In this document: one piece after another, positions 35,584 through 58,607 of the stretch | Layout of the letters: every line of letters begins with the position of its first letter | How positions within the stretch are numbered: the first letter of the stretch is position 1 | IMG/VR virus record: IMGVR_UViG_3300028558_000791 | Location: 1 to 64,000 of that record | Length of the DNA stretch: 64,000 nt | Direction: 5' to 3' (one strand) | Notes under the pieces: generated by a model | The model's database searches: none | Told to the model about the DNA's origin: nothing | The model's input: the letters and a program-made list of their open reading frames with translations, nothing else | Program-made: the position numbers and the translations under genes

Positions 35584-35683
35584 TTTCATATACATACCTA
35601 TCAATACTGATATATAAAACGTATCGAAAGAGGGTTTCGATTTTCGGGCTACGTCCGTTTATTTTAGAAAATTATCTACGTCC

Positions 35684-35712
35684 TTGACGGCGAATGTGCA
35701 GAGTTTTACTAT
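35684..35712 (+). promoter_or_regulatory. sigma70-like promoter of Ro60 gene
   Basis: TTGACG-N17-TACTAT. Confidence 0.6.
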
Positions 35713-35787
35713 GCGCAACTCGACGACATCGGCATGTTTCGTTTCAATTTGTTGGGACTATTTCCCAAATATGGAAGGTGTATTATT

Positions 35788-37419
35788 ATGTCAAACAAGA
35801 ACTTATTCTCAAACAAGAACAAGCTAACGGTATCTGTTTCTAAGAAGGTAACTCTGCCAACCAACACGGTTAATGAGGCAGGTGGAACTGCATATAAGCT
35901 GTCCGACAAGGCTGCTTTGGCGCAGTACGCCATGACTGGTACGTTCAACGGTACATACTATGCATCCGATGCAGATCAACTTAAGAAGGTCCTTGAGTTG
36001 GCAAACAAGGTAGATCCAAAGTTCGTCGCTAAGCTGGCAGTGTACGCACGCCAGAGAGGCTTGATGAAGGATATGCCTGCCGTTCTTGCAGCCGTCATTG
36101 CTGGAAGAGACGCTGACCTATTGGCTACGATTTTCGATAGAGTAATCGACAATCCAAAGATGCTTCGTAACTTCGTTCAGATCATCCGATCTGGCGCAAC
36201 TGGCCGTAAGTCCTTGGGAACTCGCCCAAAGAAGTTGGTACAGAAGTATCTTGAGAACTTGACCGACGAGCAGTTGTTCAAGGCTGATGTTGGTAACGAT
36301 CCGTCGTTGCAGGACATCATCAAGTTGGTTCACCCAAAGCCAACTAACAAGCAGCGTTCTGCGTTGTACGGTTACTTGCTCGACAAGGAGTACAACAAGA
36401 GAGACCTCGTGTCTTTGGCACAACAGTTCGAAGCATTCAAGAAGGATATGAAGGGAGAGATCCCAGATGTTCCGTTCCAGATGTTGACGGCTCTGCCATT
36501 GACTGATACGCACTGGAAGCAGATTGCTGAGAATGCAACCTGGAACCAGATCCGTATGAACCTCAATACGTTTGCTCGTCACAACGTATTGGCTGACAAG
36601 AAGCTGGTCGATGTTTTGGCAGCAAAGCTATCGGACCCAGAGCAGGTCAAGCGTTCCAAGACGTTCCCATATCAGTTGTTCACCACTTACTTGAACGTGG
36701 ACGCCACGATTCCAAGCAAGCTGACGAACGCATTGCAAGATGCGGCTGATTCTTCTTTGGATAACATTCCTGAGTTCCCAGGAAAGGTCTTCGTAATGGT
36801 TGACACTTCTGGTTCTATGGGCTCTGCCGTCACCGGTAAGAGAGTAAATCCAAAGACTGGTAAGGAGGAATCCTTTACGACTAAGGCTCGATGCGTAGAC
36901 GTGGCAGCACTTTTCGCAGCAGCAATCTTGCGCAAGAATCCAGACACTGAGATTGTGCCATTCGACACCTCAGTACATGTTGGTCACCGATTCAATCCAC
37001 GTGATTCGATCATGACCAATGCAAAGACTCTAGCTTCATTCGGTGGTGGTGGTACCAACTGCTCCGCTGCTTTGGAGTATGTCAACAAAAAGGCTGGCAA
37101 GGGCGACCTTGTCATCTACGTGTCTGACAATGAGTCATGGGTTGATACGAAGGCATCTAACTCAGGTGTGTTCGGATACTACCGCCGTAATGGCACTGCC
37201 ACTATGGAAGAGTGGAATAAGTTCGCAGCCCGTAACAAGGGTGCAAAGCTTGTCTGTATCGACATTCAACCAAACTCCTCCACCCAAGCACACGACAGGG
37301 ATGACATCCTGAACGTGGGAGGATTCAGTGACCAGGTGTTCGATGTAATCGCAAGATTCGCCGAGCTTGGAAACAACAAGGATCTCTGGATCAAGACGAT
37401 CGAAGACGTCAAACTCTAA
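35788..37419 (+). CDS. rsr: Ro60 / TROVE domain RNA-binding protein (Rsr) with vWA domain
   Basis: NEAGGTAY, TGTFNGTYY, LVHPKP, RMNLNTFARH, MIDAS VDTSGSM, GGGTNCS, VSDNESW. Confidence 0.93.
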   Translation: MSNKNLFSNKNKLTVSVSKKVTLPTNTVNEAGGTAYKLSDKAALAQYAMTGTFNGTYYASDADQLKKVLELANKVDPKFVAKLAVYARQRGLMKDMPAVLAAVIAGRDADLLATIFDRVIDNPKMLRNFVQIIRSGATGRKSLGTRPKKLVQKYLENLTDEQLFKADVGNDPSLQDIIKLVHPKPTNKQRSALYGYLLDKEYNKRDLVSLAQQFEAFKKDMKGEIPDVPFQMLTALPLTDTHWKQIAENATWNQIRMNLNTFARHNVLADKKLVDVLAAKLSDPEQVKRSKTFPYQLFTTYLNVDATIPSKLTNALQDAADSSLDNIPEFPGKVFVMVDTSGSMGSAVTGKRVNPKTGKEESFTTKARCVDVAALFAAAILRKNPDTEIVPFDTSVHVGHRFNPRDSIMTNAKTLASFGGGGTNCSAALEYVNKKAGKGDLVIYVSDNESWVDTKASNSGVFGYYRRNGTATMEEWNKFAARNKGAKLVCIDIQPNSSTQAHDRDDILNVGGFSDQVFDVIARFAELGNNKDLWIKTIEDVKL

Positions 37420-37427
37420 TCGTCAGA

Positions 37428-37492
37428 GCCTCTAACCGAAGGGTGCCCGAGTGAAGACCGGGTTGCTGATGCAAGTTCAGCATGGAGGCCCA
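37428..37492 (+). ncRNA. Compact tRNA-like RNA directly after Ro60
   Basis: GCCTCTA/TGGAGGC plus CCA; GCTGA-TGCAAGT-TCAGC T-like arm; CCCG/CGGG arm. Confidence 0.55.
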
Positions 37493-37494
37493 TC

Positions 37495-37911
37495 ATGAAT
37501 AAGTTAGAAGATTTAGTGGCGGCAGCAAGACTAGCCGCCCAACATTCGTACAGTCCATACAGCAACTTCAAAGTTGCATCCGCCGTAGAAATGGAAGATG
37601 GAAGCATCTTTAGCGGCTCTAATGTAGAGAATGCGTCTTACGGTCTCACTATCTGTGCAGAGCGCAACGCAATCTTTCAAGCTGTGTCTAAGGGACATCG
37701 CCTAATAAAACGTATCATTGTCTACGCTCCTTCACCAACTGTTCGTACTGGCCCTTGTGGAGCCTGTAGGCAGGTAATTAAAGAATTTGCCGATGAATAT
37801 ACACTAATCATTGGCGCCTGTAACTCAGACGATATATTAACTTTTACAATGGAAGATTTGTTACCAAAGAGTTTTGGTCCCGATAATCTTCTAAAGAAAA
37901 GAAACCAATGA
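37495..37911 (+). CDS. cdd: Cytidine deaminase
   Basis: YSPYS, NVENASYGLTICAER, PCGACRQ. Confidence 0.93.
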   Translation: MNKLEDLVAAARLAAQHSYSPYSNFKVASAVEMEDGSIFSGSNVENASYGLTICAERNAIFQAVSKGHRLIKRIIVYAPSPTVRTGPCGACRQVIKEFADEYTLIIGACNSDDILTFTMEDLLPKSFGPDNLLKKRNQ

Positions 37912-42245: not shown

Positions 42246-42353
42246 TGACGAATGTCCGAGTAGGATTACATTTTTATGCAAAAAAACCGATGGGGTTCGA
42301 TTCCCCTTTAGGGCTGGCGCCAGGCAAAACATCTTATTCATTTCTTGTCGTCA
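42246..42353 (+). ncRNA. Y RNA-like 1 (T-arm cargo)
   Basis: TGACGA-ATG..GAGTAGGAT-TACA / ATCTTATTC..TTG-TCGTCA; internal GGGG-TTCGATT-CCCC. Confidence 0.8.
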
Positions 42354-42355
42354 AT

Positions 42356-42432
42356 CAGAGAATGTTGTTTAATGGTTAGCATCCGTGCCCTGGAAGCATG
42401 TGGTCCCGGTTCGAATCCGGGTTCTCTGACCA
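42356..42432 (+). tRNA. tRNA-Pro(TGG), atypical loop
   Basis: CAGAGAA/TTCTCTG plus ACCA; CGTGC-CCTGGAA-GCATG. Confidence 0.75.
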
Positions 42433-42727: not shown

Positions 42728-42801
42728 GACTTTGTGGACAAATTATTAAGTCACTCCCGTTAGAGGGAGAGATGTAAGTGCAAGGCTTGCCAAGGTCACC
42801 A
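42728..42801 (+). ncRNA. tRNA-like RNA with 6-nt anticodon loop (GTTAGA)
   Basis: GACTTTG/CAAGGTC plus ACCA; CTCCC/GGGAG; T-loop TGCAAGG. Confidence 0.7.
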
Positions 42802-42802
42802 T

Positions 42803-43019
42803 GTAACAAATGCCCCGAGAGGATTACATTCATTAGGAGAACGAGGTCGTGGGTCCGAGTCCCACCACTGCTACCATCCCAAAGCACGTCATTAAATTGA
42901 AGGGACACTCGAAAGAGTGATGTTGCCTGACTTACTTAGCGAAAGCTATCTAAGTCCTCATAGCAGTGTAGCTCAGTTGGCAGAGCGCGAAAAACATCTT
43001 TTCAAATTTTTGTTGTTAC
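42803..43019 (+). ncRNA. Y RNA-like 3 containing a circularly permuted tRNA with internal CCA
   Basis: GTAACAA-ATG..GAGAGGAT-TACA / ATCTTTTC..TTG-TTGTTAC; T arm plus CACTGCT-A-CCA precedes AGCAGTG plus D arm. Confidence 0.85.
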
Positions 43020-44502: not shown

Positions 44503-44569
44503 AAGTCAAATGCCTTGATAGGATTACATTTTACCAAAAGAAAACATCTTATCTACTTTTTGTTGACTT
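44503..44569 (+). ncRNA. Y RNA-like 5 (minimal, stem only)
   Basis: AAGTCAA-ATG..GATAGGAT-TACA / AAAC-ATCTTATC..TTG-TTGACTT. Confidence 0.8.
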
Positions 44570-44572
44570 TTT

Positions 44573-45270: not shown

Positions 45271-45481
45271 GTAACGAATGCAGTTAGGATTACATCCATA
45301 ACGACCTTAAAGTAGTTGACAGAGCCGCGAGGCGCTGAATCGATGGCAACAAAACGATCACCAGGTAATGCTGAGGTCCATCAGACTCTTGAGTCGAAGT
45401 TGCGGGGCGAACGGGAAGTATCTCGAAAGAGACTTTCAATGTGCCGGTCACACCCAGTATCTTAGCAATTTTTGTCGTTAT
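45271..45481 (+). ncRNA. Y RNA-like 6 (large unknown cargo)
   Basis: GTAACGA-ATG..GTTAGGAT-TACA / ATCTTAGC..TTG-TCGTTAT. Confidence 0.78.
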
Positions 45482-45485
45482 ACAT

Positions 45486-45866: not shown

Positions 45867-45894
45867 AGGGGACAACATTGTTGCTCCCTCAATC

Positions 45895-46048
45895 GAGGCA
45901 AATGCACCGAAGGTTTACATTTGGAATAATCATATCGTCGTAAGACGGTCGCAGGTTCGAATCCTGCAACTTCCGAAAGGAAGTTTGGCTGAGTGGTCTA
46001 AAGCAATGATGCTGAAAAGCATGCTAACTTTCAAATTTTTGTTGCTTC
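45895..46048 (+). ncRNA. yrlA: Y RNA-like 7, classical YrlA architecture
   Basis: GAGGCAA-ATG / TTG-TTGCTTC; T arm GCAGG-TTCGAAT-CCTGC, acceptor AACTTCC-GAAA-GGAAGTT, then D arm. Confidence 0.85.
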
Positions 46049-46050
46049 AT

Positions 46051-46179
46051 CTCCCGCTAGTTTAAAACGAAACACTTGTTATAGAGGACGTATACTTAAT
46101 CTATGATGAGCAAGTAGTAGAGCAAAACACCTCCACGCTAAGGAGGAGATTGCGAGTGCAAGTCTCGCAAGGGAGACCA
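46051..46179 (+). ncRNA. tRNA-like RNA with ~50-nt hairpin inserted in the D loop
   Basis: CTCCC/GGGAG plus ACCA; CCTCC-ACGCTAA-GGAGG; GCGAG-TGCAAGT-CTCGC. Confidence 0.7.
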
Positions 46180-46184
46180 AGGGT

Positions 46185-46511
46185 ATGAACCAAGACAAGC
46201 CGACAATGAAGGACCTGAAAGAAGGTCCGCCATTACTTTGTCCTATCTGTGATAGACCAAACTACTTCCCTTCAGACCATCACATGGTTCCGAAGTCAAG
46301 AGGCGGCAAGTCTACTGAAACGATCTGTGAAGATTGCCACAAAGCAATCCATGCACACTTCACCAATAAAGAATTGGAAGAAACGTATCATACGCCAGAA
46401 GCTTTGTTAGCTCATGAAGGTTTTGCCAAACAGATTAAATTTCTATCGAAACAAGATCCCGGCGGCAGATCGAAAACTAAAAAGAATAAAGATCGTCTAA
46501 GACGAGAATAA
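46185..46511 (+). CDS. HNH endonuclease
   Basis: CPIC, DHHMVPKSRGG, CEDCHKAIH. Confidence 0.85.
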   Translation: MNQDKPTMKDLKEGPPLLCPICDRPNYFPSDHHMVPKSRGGKSTETICEDCHKAIHAHFTNKELEETYHTPEALLAHEGFAKQIKFLSKQDPGGRSKTKKNKDRLRRE

Positions 46512-50072: not shown

Positions 50073-50149
50073 GGGTCTTTTGATGTAAAGGCTGGCCTCT
50101 AGACTTTAGTGCTAGAGGACATCGGGTTCGACTCCCGAATGATCCGCCA
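50073..50149 (+). ncRNA. tRNA-like RNA, no D stem, loop CT-TTA-GT
   Basis: GGGTC/GATCC plus GCCA; CCTCTAG/CTAGAGG; TCGGG-TTCGACT-CCCGA. Confidence 0.65.
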
Positions 50150-51698: not shown

Positions 51699-51776
51699 AG
51701 CAGTATAGAGCAGTCCGGTAGCTCGTCAGGTTCATACCCTGAAGGTCACGTGGTTCAAATCCCGTTACTGCAACCA
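51699..51776 (+). tRNA. tRNA-Met(CAT), initiator-like
   Basis: 1:72 mismatch, GAGC/GCTC D stem, loop TTCATAC. Confidence 0.85.
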
Positions 51777-51778
51777 TA

Positions 51779-51855
51779 TGCGGAAGAGTGAAACGGCTTC
51801 CACGCAGGTCTCATAAGCCAGCAACACCAGGTTCGACTCCTGTGTTCCGCACCCA
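51779..51855 (+). tRNA. tRNA with CAT anticodon (Met)
   Basis: TGCGGAA/TTCCGCA; loop CTCATAA. Confidence 0.78.
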
Positions 51856-51877
51856 CTCAAACAGATATTAAGTTGTC

Positions 51878-52288
51878 TTGGATCCTTTAGCAAAACTTAT
51901 ACTCAACGCCCTTAAGTGTCCCATCTGTCAGTCTAGATTAGACTTACTCGATTGGAAAGACCACATACCAGGACCCAAGTATAATTTCACTTGCTCTTCT
52001 AATTGGGAGCACTATCGTATCTTCTTTGTACATTGGGAACCAGTGTGCAGAGTTGAATACGAAACAGTAATTGTTTACGAAGGTAAACACCAATATCGAA
52101 TAACTCAGTATGGTATGCCTGACCGTACTGAGATTTTTATTCATGATGTCGATGCCGAAAATCGAATCATTGATAACCGTAGTAAAACCAATAATAAGTT
52201 TTCCTATGAGAAAAAGCTTTTTGATTTCGCAAATACTACTCGCGAAAAAGTTGTGAATAGAGTTAGAACCATTCTGGTTTTCTCGTAA
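51878..52288 (+). CDS. Hypothetical protein
   Basis: CPIC motif. Confidence 0.5.
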   Translation: MDPLAKLILNALKCPICQSRLDLLDWKDHIPGPKYNFTCSSNWEHYRIFFVHWEPVCRVEYETVIVYEGKHQYRITQYGMPDRTEIFIHDVDAENRIIDNRSKTNNKFSYEKKLFDFANTTREKVVNRVRTILVFS

Positions 52289-56566: not shown

Positions 56567-56898
56567 ACATGAGCTTAGCTTGGTCAAAGGATATGGAATT
56601 GGATCCTGGTACGTTTGGAGGTTCTCCGGCATGCCATGTTTTAGTAGATATGATGAATCACAATGTTATTCCTATTATAGAGAAGCATCGTGTTTTATCA
56701 TTCATCAATGATGCTATCTATCAATTCAAGTGGTTATCCACTGTGAAGGAGTATGGCGTCAAGGAGAGGTCTATGGTTCTGATGAGGGACGATATTCTAT
56801 CTAGGGTGGATCATATGCCATATCCTGCCAAGTTTAATTCACATCTGAAGAACGTGATAACTCACCACTTCAGACGATACTTGAAAGAAGAGACCTAG
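56563..56898 (+). CDS. Hypothetical protein
   Basis: Packed ORF. Confidence 0.5.
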   Translation: MNMSLAWSKDMELDPGTFGGSPACHVLVDMMNHNVIPIIEKHRVLSFINDAIYQFKWLSTVKEYGVKERSMVLMRDDILSRVDHMPYPAKFNSHLKNVITHHFRRYLKEET

Positions 56899-57250
56899 AC
56901 AATCGCTCCCGTAAGGAGAGGAAAGTCGGAGCTACGTAGGGCAATTTGCTGGCTAACGGCCAGGCGCAGTGATGCGACAGATAGTGCAACAGAAAAGAAA
57001 CCGCCATGAATCCGCCAGGCCCGAAAGGGAGCAACGGTAGATGGTAAGGGTGAAATGGTGGGGTAAGAGCCCACCGCACCTATAGTGATATAGGTGGCAA
57101 GGTAAACCTCAGATGTAGCAAGCTAAATAGAGAGTGACTTGTCCGGTCAATACTCTCGGGTTAGTGCTGGAGCCATTAGGTAACTAACGGCCAAGATTAA
57201 TGATTGTCTCGATTTATAGACAGGACTCCGCTTATAGGGTGTCTTCTTTC
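56883..57250 (+). ncRNA. rnpB: RNase P RNA, bacterial type A
   Basis: GAGGAAAGTCGGAG, AGTGCAACAGAAA, GGGTGAAA..GGTAAGAG, GGTAAACC, ACAGGACTCCGCTTA; P1 GAAAGAAGA/TCTTCTTTC. Confidence 0.93.
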
Positions 57251-57966: not shown

Positions 57967-58607
57967 AAATCAAACTTGCCTACCCCAAGATTCCCGATAC
58001 ACTAGACTGTCCACTCAAGCAGTGTATTGCATTTGAGAAGTATGATGGAACCAATATCCATTGGACTTTCATGCCGGGTGAGGGGTGGCAAGACTACGGT
58101 GCTCGACGTGACAGATATGCCATCAATACAACTGGTGTTAGAGCCTTTGAGGAAGCGCATCCAGAGTTGAAGGGTGTCCATACTCTATGGGATCAAAAGG
58201 ATCTTCTAAATGATTTCCTTAATGAGAATCCTAAATACAATACTGCTAAAGAAATTATTGTATTCACTGAGTATCTTGGACCCCATTCTTTTGCAGGTCA
58301 ACATGACCCGAAAGATGTTATCAAGCAATTAATTATATTTGATGTCCAAGTTGATGGGAGCTTAATTCCTCCTGAACAATTTGTAGAAGACTTCAAACAA
58401 TTCAATATTGCGAGAGTTGTCTTCCAAGGAAAGTTTTCTGGCCAACTCTTCGTAGATGTTCGAAAAGGCAAGTACGATGTCAAAGAAGGGGTAGTAGTTA
58501 AGGGCATTTACAACAATCAAATCTATATGGCTAAGATTAAGACTGAAGCCTATATGGAACGATTGAAGAACGAATTCAAAGATAATTGGAAAGAATATTG
58601 GGAATGA
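57963..58607 (+). CDS. RNA ligase (Rnl2-like adenylation domain)
   Basis: Motif I EKYDGTN, FTEYLG, IFDV, EGVVVK, AKIK. Confidence 0.8.
   Translation: MKIKLAYPKIPDTLDCPLKQCIAFEKYDGTNIHWTFMPGEGWQDYGARRDRYAINTTGVRAFEEAHPELKGVHTLWDQKDLLNDFLNENPKYNTAKEIIVFTEYLGPHSFAGQHDPKDVIKQLIIFDVQVDGSLIPPEQFVEDFKQFNIARVVFQGKFSGQLFVDVRKGKYDVKEGVVVKGIYNNQIYMAKIKTEAYMERLKNEFKDNWKEYWE

What the first reader, a model, noticed from the sequence alone, without database searches (positions are those of the whole stretch)
37428..37492. Compact CCA-ending tRNA mimic immediately downstream of Ro60
Seen: the 75-nt gap between rsr and cdd is almost entirely filled by a 65-nt cloverleaf with a tiny D arm, a T-like arm and CCA. 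Its 3' strand contains the cdd RBS (GGAGG). Known: Y RNA and tRNA genes typically neighbour rsr. Inference: an RNase P site or translational switch in the Ro60 operon.
Basis: partly seen in the sequence, partly recalled or inferred. Interest (0 to 1): 0.6.

Follow-up and report, generated by a model that had tools for sequence, protein, structure and literature searches.

The report
Conserved tRNA-shaped RNA after phage Ro60
A 65-base RNA cloverleaf directly after the Ro60 gene of a 480-kb phage is real and conserved by compensatory mutations in 13 related phage loci. It is neither a tRNA nor a standard Y RNA, and it locks the ribosome-binding site of the next gene inside its closing helix.

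Summary
Window 37428-37492 folds into a four-way junction (z = -3.9) that fills the 75-nt gap between Ro60 and cdd.

**Conservation.** A covariance model finds it in 12 further phage or metagenome loci. In 10 of them it lies 6-13 nt after the Ro60 stop. 98% of pair cells are paired, and 17-18 of 21-22 pairs show double-sided changes.

**What it is not.**
- It is not a tRNA. ARAGORN and the Rfam tRNA model find nothing, the "anticodon" loop is 4-13 variable nt, and there is no discriminator base.
- The tail is C-N-A, and reads CCA in only 8 of 13 members.
- It is not a canonical Y RNA. At least five of those lie 5-8 kb downstream, interleaved with tRNAs.
- It matches no Rfam family.

**Link to the next gene.** The purine-rich 3' strand of the closing helix is the Shine-Dalgarno site of whatever gene follows (cdd, PARG, others). 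In 8 of 13 loci the ATG starts 0-2 nt after the tail.

**Related features.** A half-copy (T-like hairpin, SD, CCA) precedes an HNH endonuclease gene. The phage also encodes an RNase P RNA.

**Most likely function.** It is a cis-acting gate on the rsr polycistronic mRNA, controlling translation or processing. Function is untested, because no RNA data exist. It is an undescribed RNA family of moderate interest.

The parts
35684..35712 (+). Sigma-70-like promoter of the rsr transcript (TTGACG, 17 nt, TACTAT)
   Evidence: The -35 and -10 boxes are conserved upstream of Ro60 across the clade. No promoter or terminator is predicted between it and the element.
35752..35768 (+). Conserved 5'-UTR hairpin just before the Ro60 SD
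   Evidence: Upstream regions printed keep the hairpin through compensatory changes in relatives.
35788..37419 (+). Ro60/TROVE gene (rsr). The start is taken at the conserved Met; the longest ORF starts at 35734.
   Evidence: Pfam vWA_Ro60 9e-14 and TROVE 3e-9. Alignment A1.
37427..37427 (+). Conserved unpaired A at position -1
   Evidence: A in 12 of 13 members.
37428..37434 (+). Closing ('acceptor') helix, pyrimidine-rich 5' strand
   Evidence: 7 bp. 6 of 7 pairs have double-sided changes.
37435..37444 (+). Mini arm hp1 ('D-like'): 3 bp plus the tetraloop G-W-A-G, conserved as CCG(A/U)AGG
   Evidence: The outer pair covaries (GC, AU, UA).
37445..37463 (+). Variable arm hp2 ('anticodon-like'): 5-6 bp stem, loop of 4-13 nt with no conserved sequence
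   Evidence: All 5 core pairs covary.
37464..37482 (+). T-like arm hp3: 6 bp plus the 7-nt loop UGC(A/G)AG(U/C), which fits the T-loop pattern U-N-N-R-A
   Evidence: 5 of 6 pairs covary and the loop is nearly invariant.
37483..37489 (+). Closing helix, purine-rich 3' strand, containing the cdd Shine-Dalgarno GGAGG (37484-37488)
   Evidence: Freeing it costs about 9.6 kcal/mol.
37490..37492 (+). 3' tail CCA (family consensus C-N-A)
37495..37911 (+). cdd (cytidine deaminase). Its ATG is 2 nt after the tail.
   Evidence: Pfam dCMP_cyt_deam_1 4.5e-19.
46151..46179 (+). Paralogous half-module: T-like hairpin with the same UGCAAGU loop, then AGGGAGA and CCA, 5 nt before the ATG of an HNH endonuclease ORF (46185-46511)
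   Evidence: Conserved with a compensatory stem change in two related phages.

Best explanation
The element is a previously undescribed, conserved structured RNA embedded in the rsr (Ro60) polycistronic transcript. It is a tRNA-shaped perfect four-way junction. Its closing helix pairs a pyrimidine-rich 5' strand, starting 6-13 nt after the upstream stop codon, with a purine-rich 3' strand. That 3' strand is the Shine-Dalgarno sequence of whichever gene follows, and the start codon usually lies 0-2 nt after the C-N-A tail. I think it most likely works in cis as a gate. While the cloverleaf is folded, the next cistron's ribosome-binding site is locked away. Expression then depends on something that opens, cuts or binds the cloverleaf. 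The two sequence-conserved loops (G-W-A-G and the T-loop-like UGCRAGY) either form a tRNA-like elbow or bind a trans factor. Candidate operators are Ro60 itself, made right next to the element, or tRNA-processing enzymes, including the phage's own RNase P. What is shown: the structure, its conservation, its linkage to the Ro60 3' end, and the SD and ATG geometry. What is inferred: the effect on translation, the operator, and any cleavage.
For: - Fold and statistics. 11 of 13 members fold to the same cloverleaf by MFE alone.
- The element is on the Ro60 transcript, with no promoter or terminator between the rsr promoter and it.
- The SD lies in the 3' strand and the start codon is 0-2 nt after the tail in 8 of 13 loci. 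The downstream genes differ: cdd, PARG, a 72-aa ORF, a Zn-ribbon protein and a 97-aa ORF.
- Where the ATG is 8-19 nt away, a second SD sits in the spacer.
- The computed cost of freeing the 7-nt strand is 2-10 kcal/mol, and 9.6 in the window.
- The spacing to the upstream stop is kept (8 nt) even in L006, where a different 558-aa ORF precedes the element.
- The only other hairpin with this loop in the 480-kb genome also sits directly 5' of an SD and ATG, before an HNH gene. It is conserved in two relatives.
- The element is single-copy in the genome and lies next to Ro60 or a Ro60 3' remnant in 12 of 13 members and in the degenerate L020.
Against: - A simple hairpin would be enough to mask an SD. 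A four-way junction with two sequence-conserved loops implies an additional, unknown function.
- In 5 of 13 loci the next gene has its own SD outside the element.
- In the HNH-linked half-copy the SD is not sequestered.
- With 6-13 nt between the stop codon and the helix, a terminating ribosome would barely reach the helix. Simple termination-driven unmasking is therefore doubtful.
- Complete relatives with Ro60 lack the element entirely (G006, G007, G009), so it is accessory.
- There is no expression or processing data.
Confidence: 0.4

Rival explanations
1. tRNA-style punctuation. The cloverleaf is cut out of the rsr mRNA by RNase P (host or phage-encoded) at 37427/37428 and by a 3' tRNA-processing activity after the C-N-A tail. 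This sets the Ro60 mRNA 3' end, releases a roughly 65-nt tRNA-like RNA, and leaves the downstream cistron as a leaderless or near-leaderless mRNA.
For: - The topology is a cloverleaf with a 7-bp closing helix stacked on a 6-bp T-like arm (13 bp), and the loop fits U-N-N-R-A.
- The phage encodes an RNase P RNA (272 bits), as do 5 relatives.
- In this genome every tRNA encodes CCA, and the next RNA (a Y RNA) starts immediately after it. The CCA-then-next-product junction is therefore a genomic habit, mirrored by CNA-then-AUG in 8 of 13 loci.
- M. smegmatis YrlA is cut by RNase P and receives CCA (PMC4201824).
- From my own knowledge, mascRNA/MALAT1 and mitochondrial tRNA punctuation are precedents.
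Against: - There is no discriminator base.
- The tail is CCA in only 8 of 13 members.
- Position -1 is A, whereas it is mostly U in the phage's tRNAs.
- There is no G18/G19-type D loop, and position 55 of the loop is G.
- The Rfam tRNA model gives nothing even at E <= 10. ARAGORN finds 0 of 13 in standard mode. A true tRNA scores only 6.5 bits with the element's model.
- Presence of the element does not track presence of RNase P RNA. G005, G007 and G009 have RNase P RNA but no cloverleaf.
Confidence: 0.22
2. A non-canonical, compact Ro60-partner RNA (YrlB-like small Y RNA), made from the rsr transcript, that binds Ro60 through the CCG(A/U)AGG arm.
For: - It lies immediately 3' of rsr on the same strand. 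Canonical Y RNAs occupy this position in more distant Ro60 loci.
- The Ro60 tree shows a clade with canonical Y RNAs downstream and a separate clade holding the cloverleaf.
- hp1 resembles the GNCGAAN0-1G Ro60-binding motif, and YrlB-type RNAs are described as carrying that motif plus a possible T arm (PMC4201824).
- A phage Ro60 binds phage Yrl RNAs that carry CGAA (PMC12135203).
Against: - The motif fits exactly in only 2 of 13 members, and 7 have CGUA.
- It forms a closed tetraloop hairpin, not the 5' strand of a bulged terminal helix.
- The GGAUUACA and UUGUCG blocks shared by this phage's own Y RNAs are absent.
- The genome already has at least 5-6 canonical Y RNAs.
- Element-free complete relatives keep Ro60.
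Confidence: 0.2
3. A 3'-end stabiliser of the Ro60 mRNA: a structured cap against 3'-5' exonucleases that does not terminate transcription.
For: Relatives lacking the element carry a terminator-type hairpin at exactly the same place after the Ro60 stop (L006, L007/8, L011, L013, L019, L036, L038, L045, L058, L066). The element has no U tract.
Against: This needs a 3' cut that has not been shown. It does not explain the conserved loops or the abutting start codons. The element persists intact in L127, where only a remnant of about 10 codons of Ro60 remains.
Confidence: 0.1
4. A decaying tRNA pseudogene or a chance fold with no function.
For: The phage is rich in tRNA genes. The element has been lost in several relatives and is degenerate in L020.
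Against: 17-18 pairs have compensatory changes across loci whose Ro60 is only 64-86% identical. The loops are nearly invariant. 0 of 500 shuffles reach the observed covariation.
Confidence: 0.03

Closest known systems
YrlA/YrlB-type bacterial and phage Y RNAs (Chen et al. 2014, PMC4201824; Thermus phage phiLo Yrl1/2, PMC12135203)
   Same: Encoded next to rsr on the same strand, and co-transcribed with it, as in the Salmonella rsr-yrlBA operon. Contains a tRNA-like feature (a T-type arm) and a CGAA-like motif near the 5' end.
   Different: There is no bulged terminal helix with the C(G/A)AAUG ... GGAUUACA ... UUGUCG blocks that this phage's own Y RNAs share. The arms are in tRNA order, not the permuted T-AS-D order. 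The T loop is UGCRAGY rather than UUCGAAU. It is only 60-69 nt long. Its 3' strand doubles as an SD.
tRNA-like processing elements (mascRNA at the MALAT1 3' end, mitochondrial tRNA punctuation and t-elements, RNase P cleavage of polycistronic mRNAs); comparison from my own knowledge
   Same: A compact cloverleaf with a reduced D arm and a non-conserved anticodon arm, lying between two functional RNA segments of one transcript. The downstream product starts at or next to its 3' end.
   Different: There is no discriminator or conserved CCA, position -1 is A, and cleavage is unproven. The junction has no linker nucleotides at all (none at positions 8/9 or 26, and no variable loop).
Canonical tRNA
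   Same: Four-arm topology, a 7-bp closing helix, and a 7-nt T-type loop with U1, R4 and A5.
   Different: It fails tRNA models. The D arm is 3 bp plus 4 nt. The 'anticodon' loop is 4-13 nt and not conserved. The T stem is 6 bp. There is no discriminator.
SD-sequestering mRNA structures and translational operators (for example RNA-phage operator hairpins and coupled cistrons); comparison from my own knowledge
   Same: The SD of the downstream cistron is base-paired in a stable helix a few nt from the AUG.
   Different: It is far more elaborate than needed for masking, and it has two conserved loops. The operator is unknown.

Membership tests
tRNA | Recognised by tRNA models (Rfam RF00005, ARAGORN) | tested here: not met
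   No ARAGORN call at 37428. No Rfam hit at E <= 10 in 33.8-38.2 kb. ARAGORN finds 0 of 13 in standard mode, 2 of 13 in mitochondrial mode and 1 of 13 at a relaxed threshold, with inconsistent anticodons.
tRNA | 7-nt anticodon loop with a conserved anticodon | tested here: not met
   The hp2 loop is 4-13 nt and its sequence is not conserved.
tRNA | Discriminator base followed by CCA | tested here: not met
   The helix is followed directly by C-N-A, and pair 1-64 covaries (GC 10, AU 3). All 31 tRNA genes in the window (29 by ARAGORN, 2 more by Rfam) have N-CCA.
tRNA | Cloverleaf with a 7-bp acceptor helix and a T arm | tested here: met
   The T stem is 6 bp rather than 5.
YrlA/Y RNA | Encoded within a few kb of rsr on the same strand | tested here: met
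   6-13 nt after the Ro60 stop in 11 of 13 members.
YrlA/Y RNA | GNCGAAN0-1G motif near the 5' end (PMC4201824) | tested here: inconclusive
   Exact in 2 of 13 members (GCCGAAG), and one mismatch in the rest (ACCGAAG, GCCGUAG, or a gapped variant in L027). It sits in a closed tetraloop hairpin.
YrlA/Y RNA | Terminal 5'/3' helix with an internal bulge, plus the 3' UUGUCG-type strand and the GGAUUACA block seen in this clade's Y RNAs | tested here: not met
   Absent from the element. Present in 5 window genes and 1 more in the genome.
YrlA/Y RNA | Bound by Ro60 | not testable with these tools
   Needs RIP or EMSA.
RNase P substrate / tRNA-like processing element | Acceptor/T-arm coaxial stack of about 12-13 bp capped by a T-loop motif | tested here: met
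   7 + 6 bp with no intervening nucleotides. The loop is U-G-C-R-A-G-Y. This is secondary-structure evidence only.
RNase P substrate / tRNA-like processing element | 3' RCCA and, typically, U at -1 | tested here: not met
   The tail is C-N-A with no discriminator, and position -1 is A in 12 of 13 members.
RNase P substrate / tRNA-like processing element | Cleavage at the 5' end of the helix | not testable with these tools
   No RNA runs hold the locus.
SD-sequestering translational element | The SD of the downstream ORF is paired in a stable helix close to the AUG | tested here: met
   Window GGAGG 37484-37488, ATG 37495. 8 of 13 loci have the ATG 0-2 nt after the tail. The cost of freeing the strand is 2-10 kcal/mol.
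Intrinsic terminator | GC-rich hairpin followed by a U tract | tested here: not met
   No terminator call at the element and no U run after it.
Any Rfam 15 family | Covariance-model match | tested here: not met
   Nothing at the gathering threshold or at E <= 10 overlaps 37428-37492.

The most novel reading that the evidence does not exclude
The cloverleaf is a third class of Ro60-associated RNA. It would be a minimal tRNA-shaped RNA punctuating the rsr operon, excised by the phage's own RNase P. Excision would yield a stable 65-nt RNA that acts with Ro60, and a leaderless mRNA for the next gene. That would be mitochondria-style tRNA punctuation operating in a huge phage.
Probability: 0.15. 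Interest if true: 0.8.

Novelty: new variant of a known kind. Interest (0 to 1): 0.55.

Why it matters
Ro60 and its RNA partners are central to structured-RNA quality control and to autoimmunity research, and phage versions are only now being studied. This element would be a new, very compact structured RNA tied to a phage Ro60 gene. Its architecture (a linker-free four-way junction, a T-loop-like arm, and an SD built into the closing helix) does not fit tRNA, YrlA or any Rfam family. If it gates or punctuates the operon, it links Ro60 expression to neighbouring NAD/nucleotide-metabolism genes by an RNA mechanism not described for phages. Its context makes this phage clade a promising system for phage-run tRNA-type RNA processing. 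That context includes a phage-encoded RNase P RNA conserved in six related huge phages, and arrays of Y RNAs interleaved with CCA-encoding tRNAs.

Tried and rejected
- **Cultured phages.** DNA similarity to cultured phages found no match to the locus, and only chance 21-nt hits to the element.
- **RNA evidence.** No RNA run holds the locus. DNA contigs cannot show RNA ends.
- **Upstream GGCGAATG.** This motif upstream of Ro60 looked like a Y-RNA motif, but it lies in the promoter spacer and is not conserved.
- **Pattern scans.** Degenerate-pattern scans gave mostly chance hits. After model filtering, viral contigs added L127 and one outlier, L122: GC 72%, a small Mom/ParB phage contig with no Ro60, 42.7 bits, tail UCCA. 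L122 may be a remote member, but it was preselected by the pattern. In bacterial genomes, only the first 80 of more than 120 pattern hits were model-filtered, and none was convincing.
- **Stop-codon read-through.** Read-through into cdd is conceivable, because the phage has a tRNA-Sup(UUA) and the 75-nt spacer is open and in frame. However, other loci have tandem stops or are out of frame. 8 of 13 are in frame, which is not significant given relatedness.
- **Loop covariation.** No covariation was seen between the hp1 loop (A/U) and T-like loop variants.
- **Link to the HNH gene.** The HNH protein after the half-copy is not homologous to the Zn-ribbon ORF that follows the cloverleaf in L032 and L020.
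- **Closest cultured Ro60 phage.** Myxococcus phage Mx1 (52% identity) has no cloverleaf.
- **Tree.** The careful tree search did not finish, so the Ro60 tree used is the quick one.

Full report
**Context.** The window is the first 64 kb of a 480,838-bp IMG/VR virus record, a huge phage from a rhizosphere metagenome contig of 498 kb. GC content is about 44%. Around the finding lie several genes:
- a nucleoside deoxyribosyltransferase/NUDIX gene;
- Ro60 (Pfam vWA_Ro60 and TROVE);
- cdd;
- a microbial PARG;
- a GIY-YIG gene;
- a cytidylyltransferase-like gene.

From 41.5 kb onward there are about 30 tRNA genes and a class-A RNase P RNA.

- Ro60 stops at 37419 and cdd starts at 37495. The 75-nt gap holds a 65-nt sequence (37428-37492) that folds alone into a four-way junction. 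The energy is -29.3 kcal/mol, the z-score is -3.9, and none of 200 shuffles folds as well.
- The arms are a 7-bp closing helix, a 3-bp arm with a GAAG loop, a 5-bp arm with a 9-nt loop, and a 6-bp arm with the loop UGCAAGU.
- No unpaired nucleotides separate the helices. The structure is followed by CCA.
- GGAGG, the only plausible cdd Shine-Dalgarno, is in the 3' strand of the closing helix.

**Conservation.**
- Ro60 relatives were collected from viral and metagenome contigs. A covariance model built from the window and one relative was then rebuilt from 12 sequences.
- The models find the element in 12 further independent loci at 48-94 bits. It is single-copy in the window's own genome.
- On the model-fitted alignment, 98% of pair cells are standard pairs, against 22-47% when partners are slid. 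17 of 21 pairs have changes on both sides, and 0 of 500 shuffles reach the observed covariation.
- A model-independent MAFFT + RNAalifold run on the 13 sequences with flanks predicts the same cloverleaf, with 18 of 22 pairs compensated.
- 11 of 13 sequences fold to it by MFE alone.
- Sequence conservation is concentrated in two loops: CCG(A/U)AGG in the mini arm and UGC(A/G)AG(U/C) in the T-like arm. It also covers an unpaired A at -1 and the tail C-N-A. The middle arm varies freely in loop length (4-13 nt) and sequence.

**What it is not.**
- It is not a tRNA.
  - ARAGORN and Rfam's tRNA model miss it, even at E <= 10 on a 4.4-kb search.
  - Relaxed and mitochondrial ARAGORN modes call at most 2 of 13, with inconsistent anticodons.
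  - A real tRNA scores only 6.5 bits with the element's model.
- It has no discriminator. The first pair covaries, so the tail abuts the helix. The tail is CCA in only 8 of 13 members. All 31 tRNA genes in the window (29 by ARAGORN, 2 more by Rfam) encode N-CCA and mostly have U at -1.
- It matches no Rfam family.
- It is not a terminator. There is no U tract and no terminator call.

**Relation to Y RNAs.**
- In more distant Ro60 loci (45-55% identity), the stretch just 3' of Ro60 holds canonical YrlA/YrlB-type Y RNAs. These have a terminal helix, a C(G/A)AAUG motif, a GG(G/A)A(C/U)UACA block, a canonical GGUUCGAAUCC T arm, and a UUGUCG 3' strand. They match the description in Chen et al. 2014 (PMC4201824).
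- The window's own genome has at least five such genes interleaved with tRNAs, at about 42.25, 42.81, 44.51, 45.28 and 45.90 kb. One more lies at 76.35 kb. Each starts right after the CCA of the preceding tRNA.
- The cloverleaf lacks all of these blocks. Its CCG(A/U)AGG arm fits the published GNCGAAN0-1G motif exactly in only 2 of 13 members.
- It is therefore not the phage's canonical Y RNA. A role as an extra, unconventional Ro60 ligand cannot be excluded.
- A quick Ro60 tree separates a clade with canonical Y RNAs downstream from the clade that contains the window. 11 of the 12 element-bearing Ro60 sequences in the tree fall in one 15-member subclade, with scattered losses.
- Relatives without the element have a terminator-type hairpin at the same spot. 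Three essentially complete relatives lack the element anywhere.

**Linkage and junction geometry.**
- In 11 of 13 members the element begins 6-13 nt after the Ro60 stop.
- In L006 a 558-aa ORF has been inserted between Ro60 and the element, yet the element again starts 8 nt after that ORF's stop.
- In L127 only a remnant of about 10 codons of Ro60 precedes an intact element.
- In L020 an insertion with a duplicated Ro60 3' end precedes a degenerate copy.
- The downstream gene varies: cdd, PARG, an R2K ATP-grasp, a GDSL-like protein, a Zn-ribbon protein, and small unknown ORFs.
- Even so, in 8 of 13 loci its ATG starts 0-2 nt after the tail. In those loci the only SD is the purine-rich 3' strand of the closing helix.
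- Where the ATG is 8-19 nt away, a separate SD is present.
- Freeing that strand costs 2-10 kcal/mol, and 9.6 in the window.

**A related half-module.**
- Only one other hairpin in the 480-kb genome has a UGCRAGY loop on a stem of at least 5 bp. It lies at 46151-46179.
- It has the same 6-bp/7-nt architecture and is followed by AGGGAGA and CCA. It sits 5 nt before the ATG of an HNH endonuclease gene (PF01844).
- It is conserved, with a compensatory stem change and the same downstream gene, in two related huge phages.
- So the unit 'T-like hairpin, SD, CCA, AUG' recurs at two translation-initiation regions.

**Mechanism.**
- The shown facts point first to a cis-acting role at the cistron junction. 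The cloverleaf sequesters the next gene's ribosome-binding site, and its two conserved loops imply either a defined tertiary fold or a bound factor.
- I commit to a translational/processing gate with confidence of about 0.4. Candidate operators are Ro60 itself, or tRNA-processing enzymes.
- The RNase P/punctuation model is attractive for several reasons:
  - The phage and five relatives carry RNase P RNA.
  - The genome habitually places the next RNA immediately after CCA.
  - M. smegmatis YrlA is an RNase P and CCA-adding substrate.
- Against it, the element lacks the usual RNase P determinants, and presence of the element does not track presence of RNase P RNA.
- These readings are not mutually exclusive. 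None can be decided without RNA end-mapping or reporter assays, and no RNA run holds this locus.

**Novelty and verdict.**
- No paper in the searchable library describes such an element. The phage Ro60 literature reports only canonical-type Yrl RNAs.
- I rate it a new variant of a known kind: tRNA-like or Ro60-associated structured RNA. It is real and conserved, and of moderate interest (0.55). The main open question is function.

Noticed in passing
window 56887-57250 (+); relatives G003 51723-52066, G004 58158-58489, G005 36384-36715, G007 411691-412037 (-), G009 415917-416284: A full-length bacterial class-A RNase P RNA (272 bits; the gathering score is 100) is encoded in this huge phage. 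It is also present in 5 of 9 related phage records, always about 20-25 kb from Ro60. My literature searches found no report of a phage-encoded RNase P RNA.
   Followed up: partly
window ~42246-42353, ~42802-42950, 44503-44572, 45271-45483, ~45890-46055 (+); genome ~76340-76475: At least six canonical Y-RNA-like genes are interleaved with tRNA genes. They share a 5' (A/G)C(G/A)AAUG(C/U) ... AGGAUUACAU block and a 3' UUUUGU(C/U)G block, and some have a T arm or the full T-AS-D order. Each starts directly after the encoded CCA of the preceding tRNA.
   Followed up: partly
window 46122-46183 and ORF 46185-46511 (+): A conserved two-hairpin 5' UTR lies before an HNH endonuclease gene inside the tRNA/Y-RNA array. 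It consists of a pyrimidine/purine hairpin plus a T-like UGCAAGU hairpin, then AGGGAG-N-CCA. Its 3' part is a paralogue of the cloverleaf's 3' half.
   Followed up: partly
window 35684-35712 and 35752-35768 (+): Ro60 has its own sigma-70-like promoter and a 5'-UTR hairpin (UUGGGACUAUUUCCCAA) just before its SD. The hairpin is kept by compensatory changes across the whole clade, including phages without the cloverleaf.
   Followed up: partly
window 50073-50149 (+): ARAGORN calls a suppressor tRNA with anticodon UUA, which reads UAA. Ro60 ends in TAA, and the spacer to cdd is open and in frame. Other loci do not support read-through.
   Followed up: partly
window 42728-42801 and 42356-42432 (+): There are two odd tRNA calls next to Y RNAs in the array. 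One has a 2-nt 'anticodon'. The other is a weak tRNA-Pro (29.2 bits).
   Followed up: no
L020 4108-5058; L006 4172-5848; L127 10028-10067: The Ro60/cloverleaf junction is a hotspot for insertions. L020 has an insertion of about 860 nt with a duplicated Ro60 3' end. L006 has a 558-aa ORF with no Pfam match. L127 has only a Ro60 remnant left.
   Followed up: partly
L122 6596-6664 (-): A possible remote member of the family (42.7 bits, tail UCCA) lies in a GC-rich small phage contig, downstream of a Mom-like gene and with no Ro60. It was preselected by a sequence pattern, so its significance is uncertain.
   Followed up: partly
window 35590-35660 (+) and the equivalent positions in relatives: A conserved upstream motif (CTATCAATA..GATATATAA, then a hairpin containing GAGGG) recurs before the Ro60 promoter in many relatives. 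It may be a phage-specific promoter or terminator signal.
   Followed up: no
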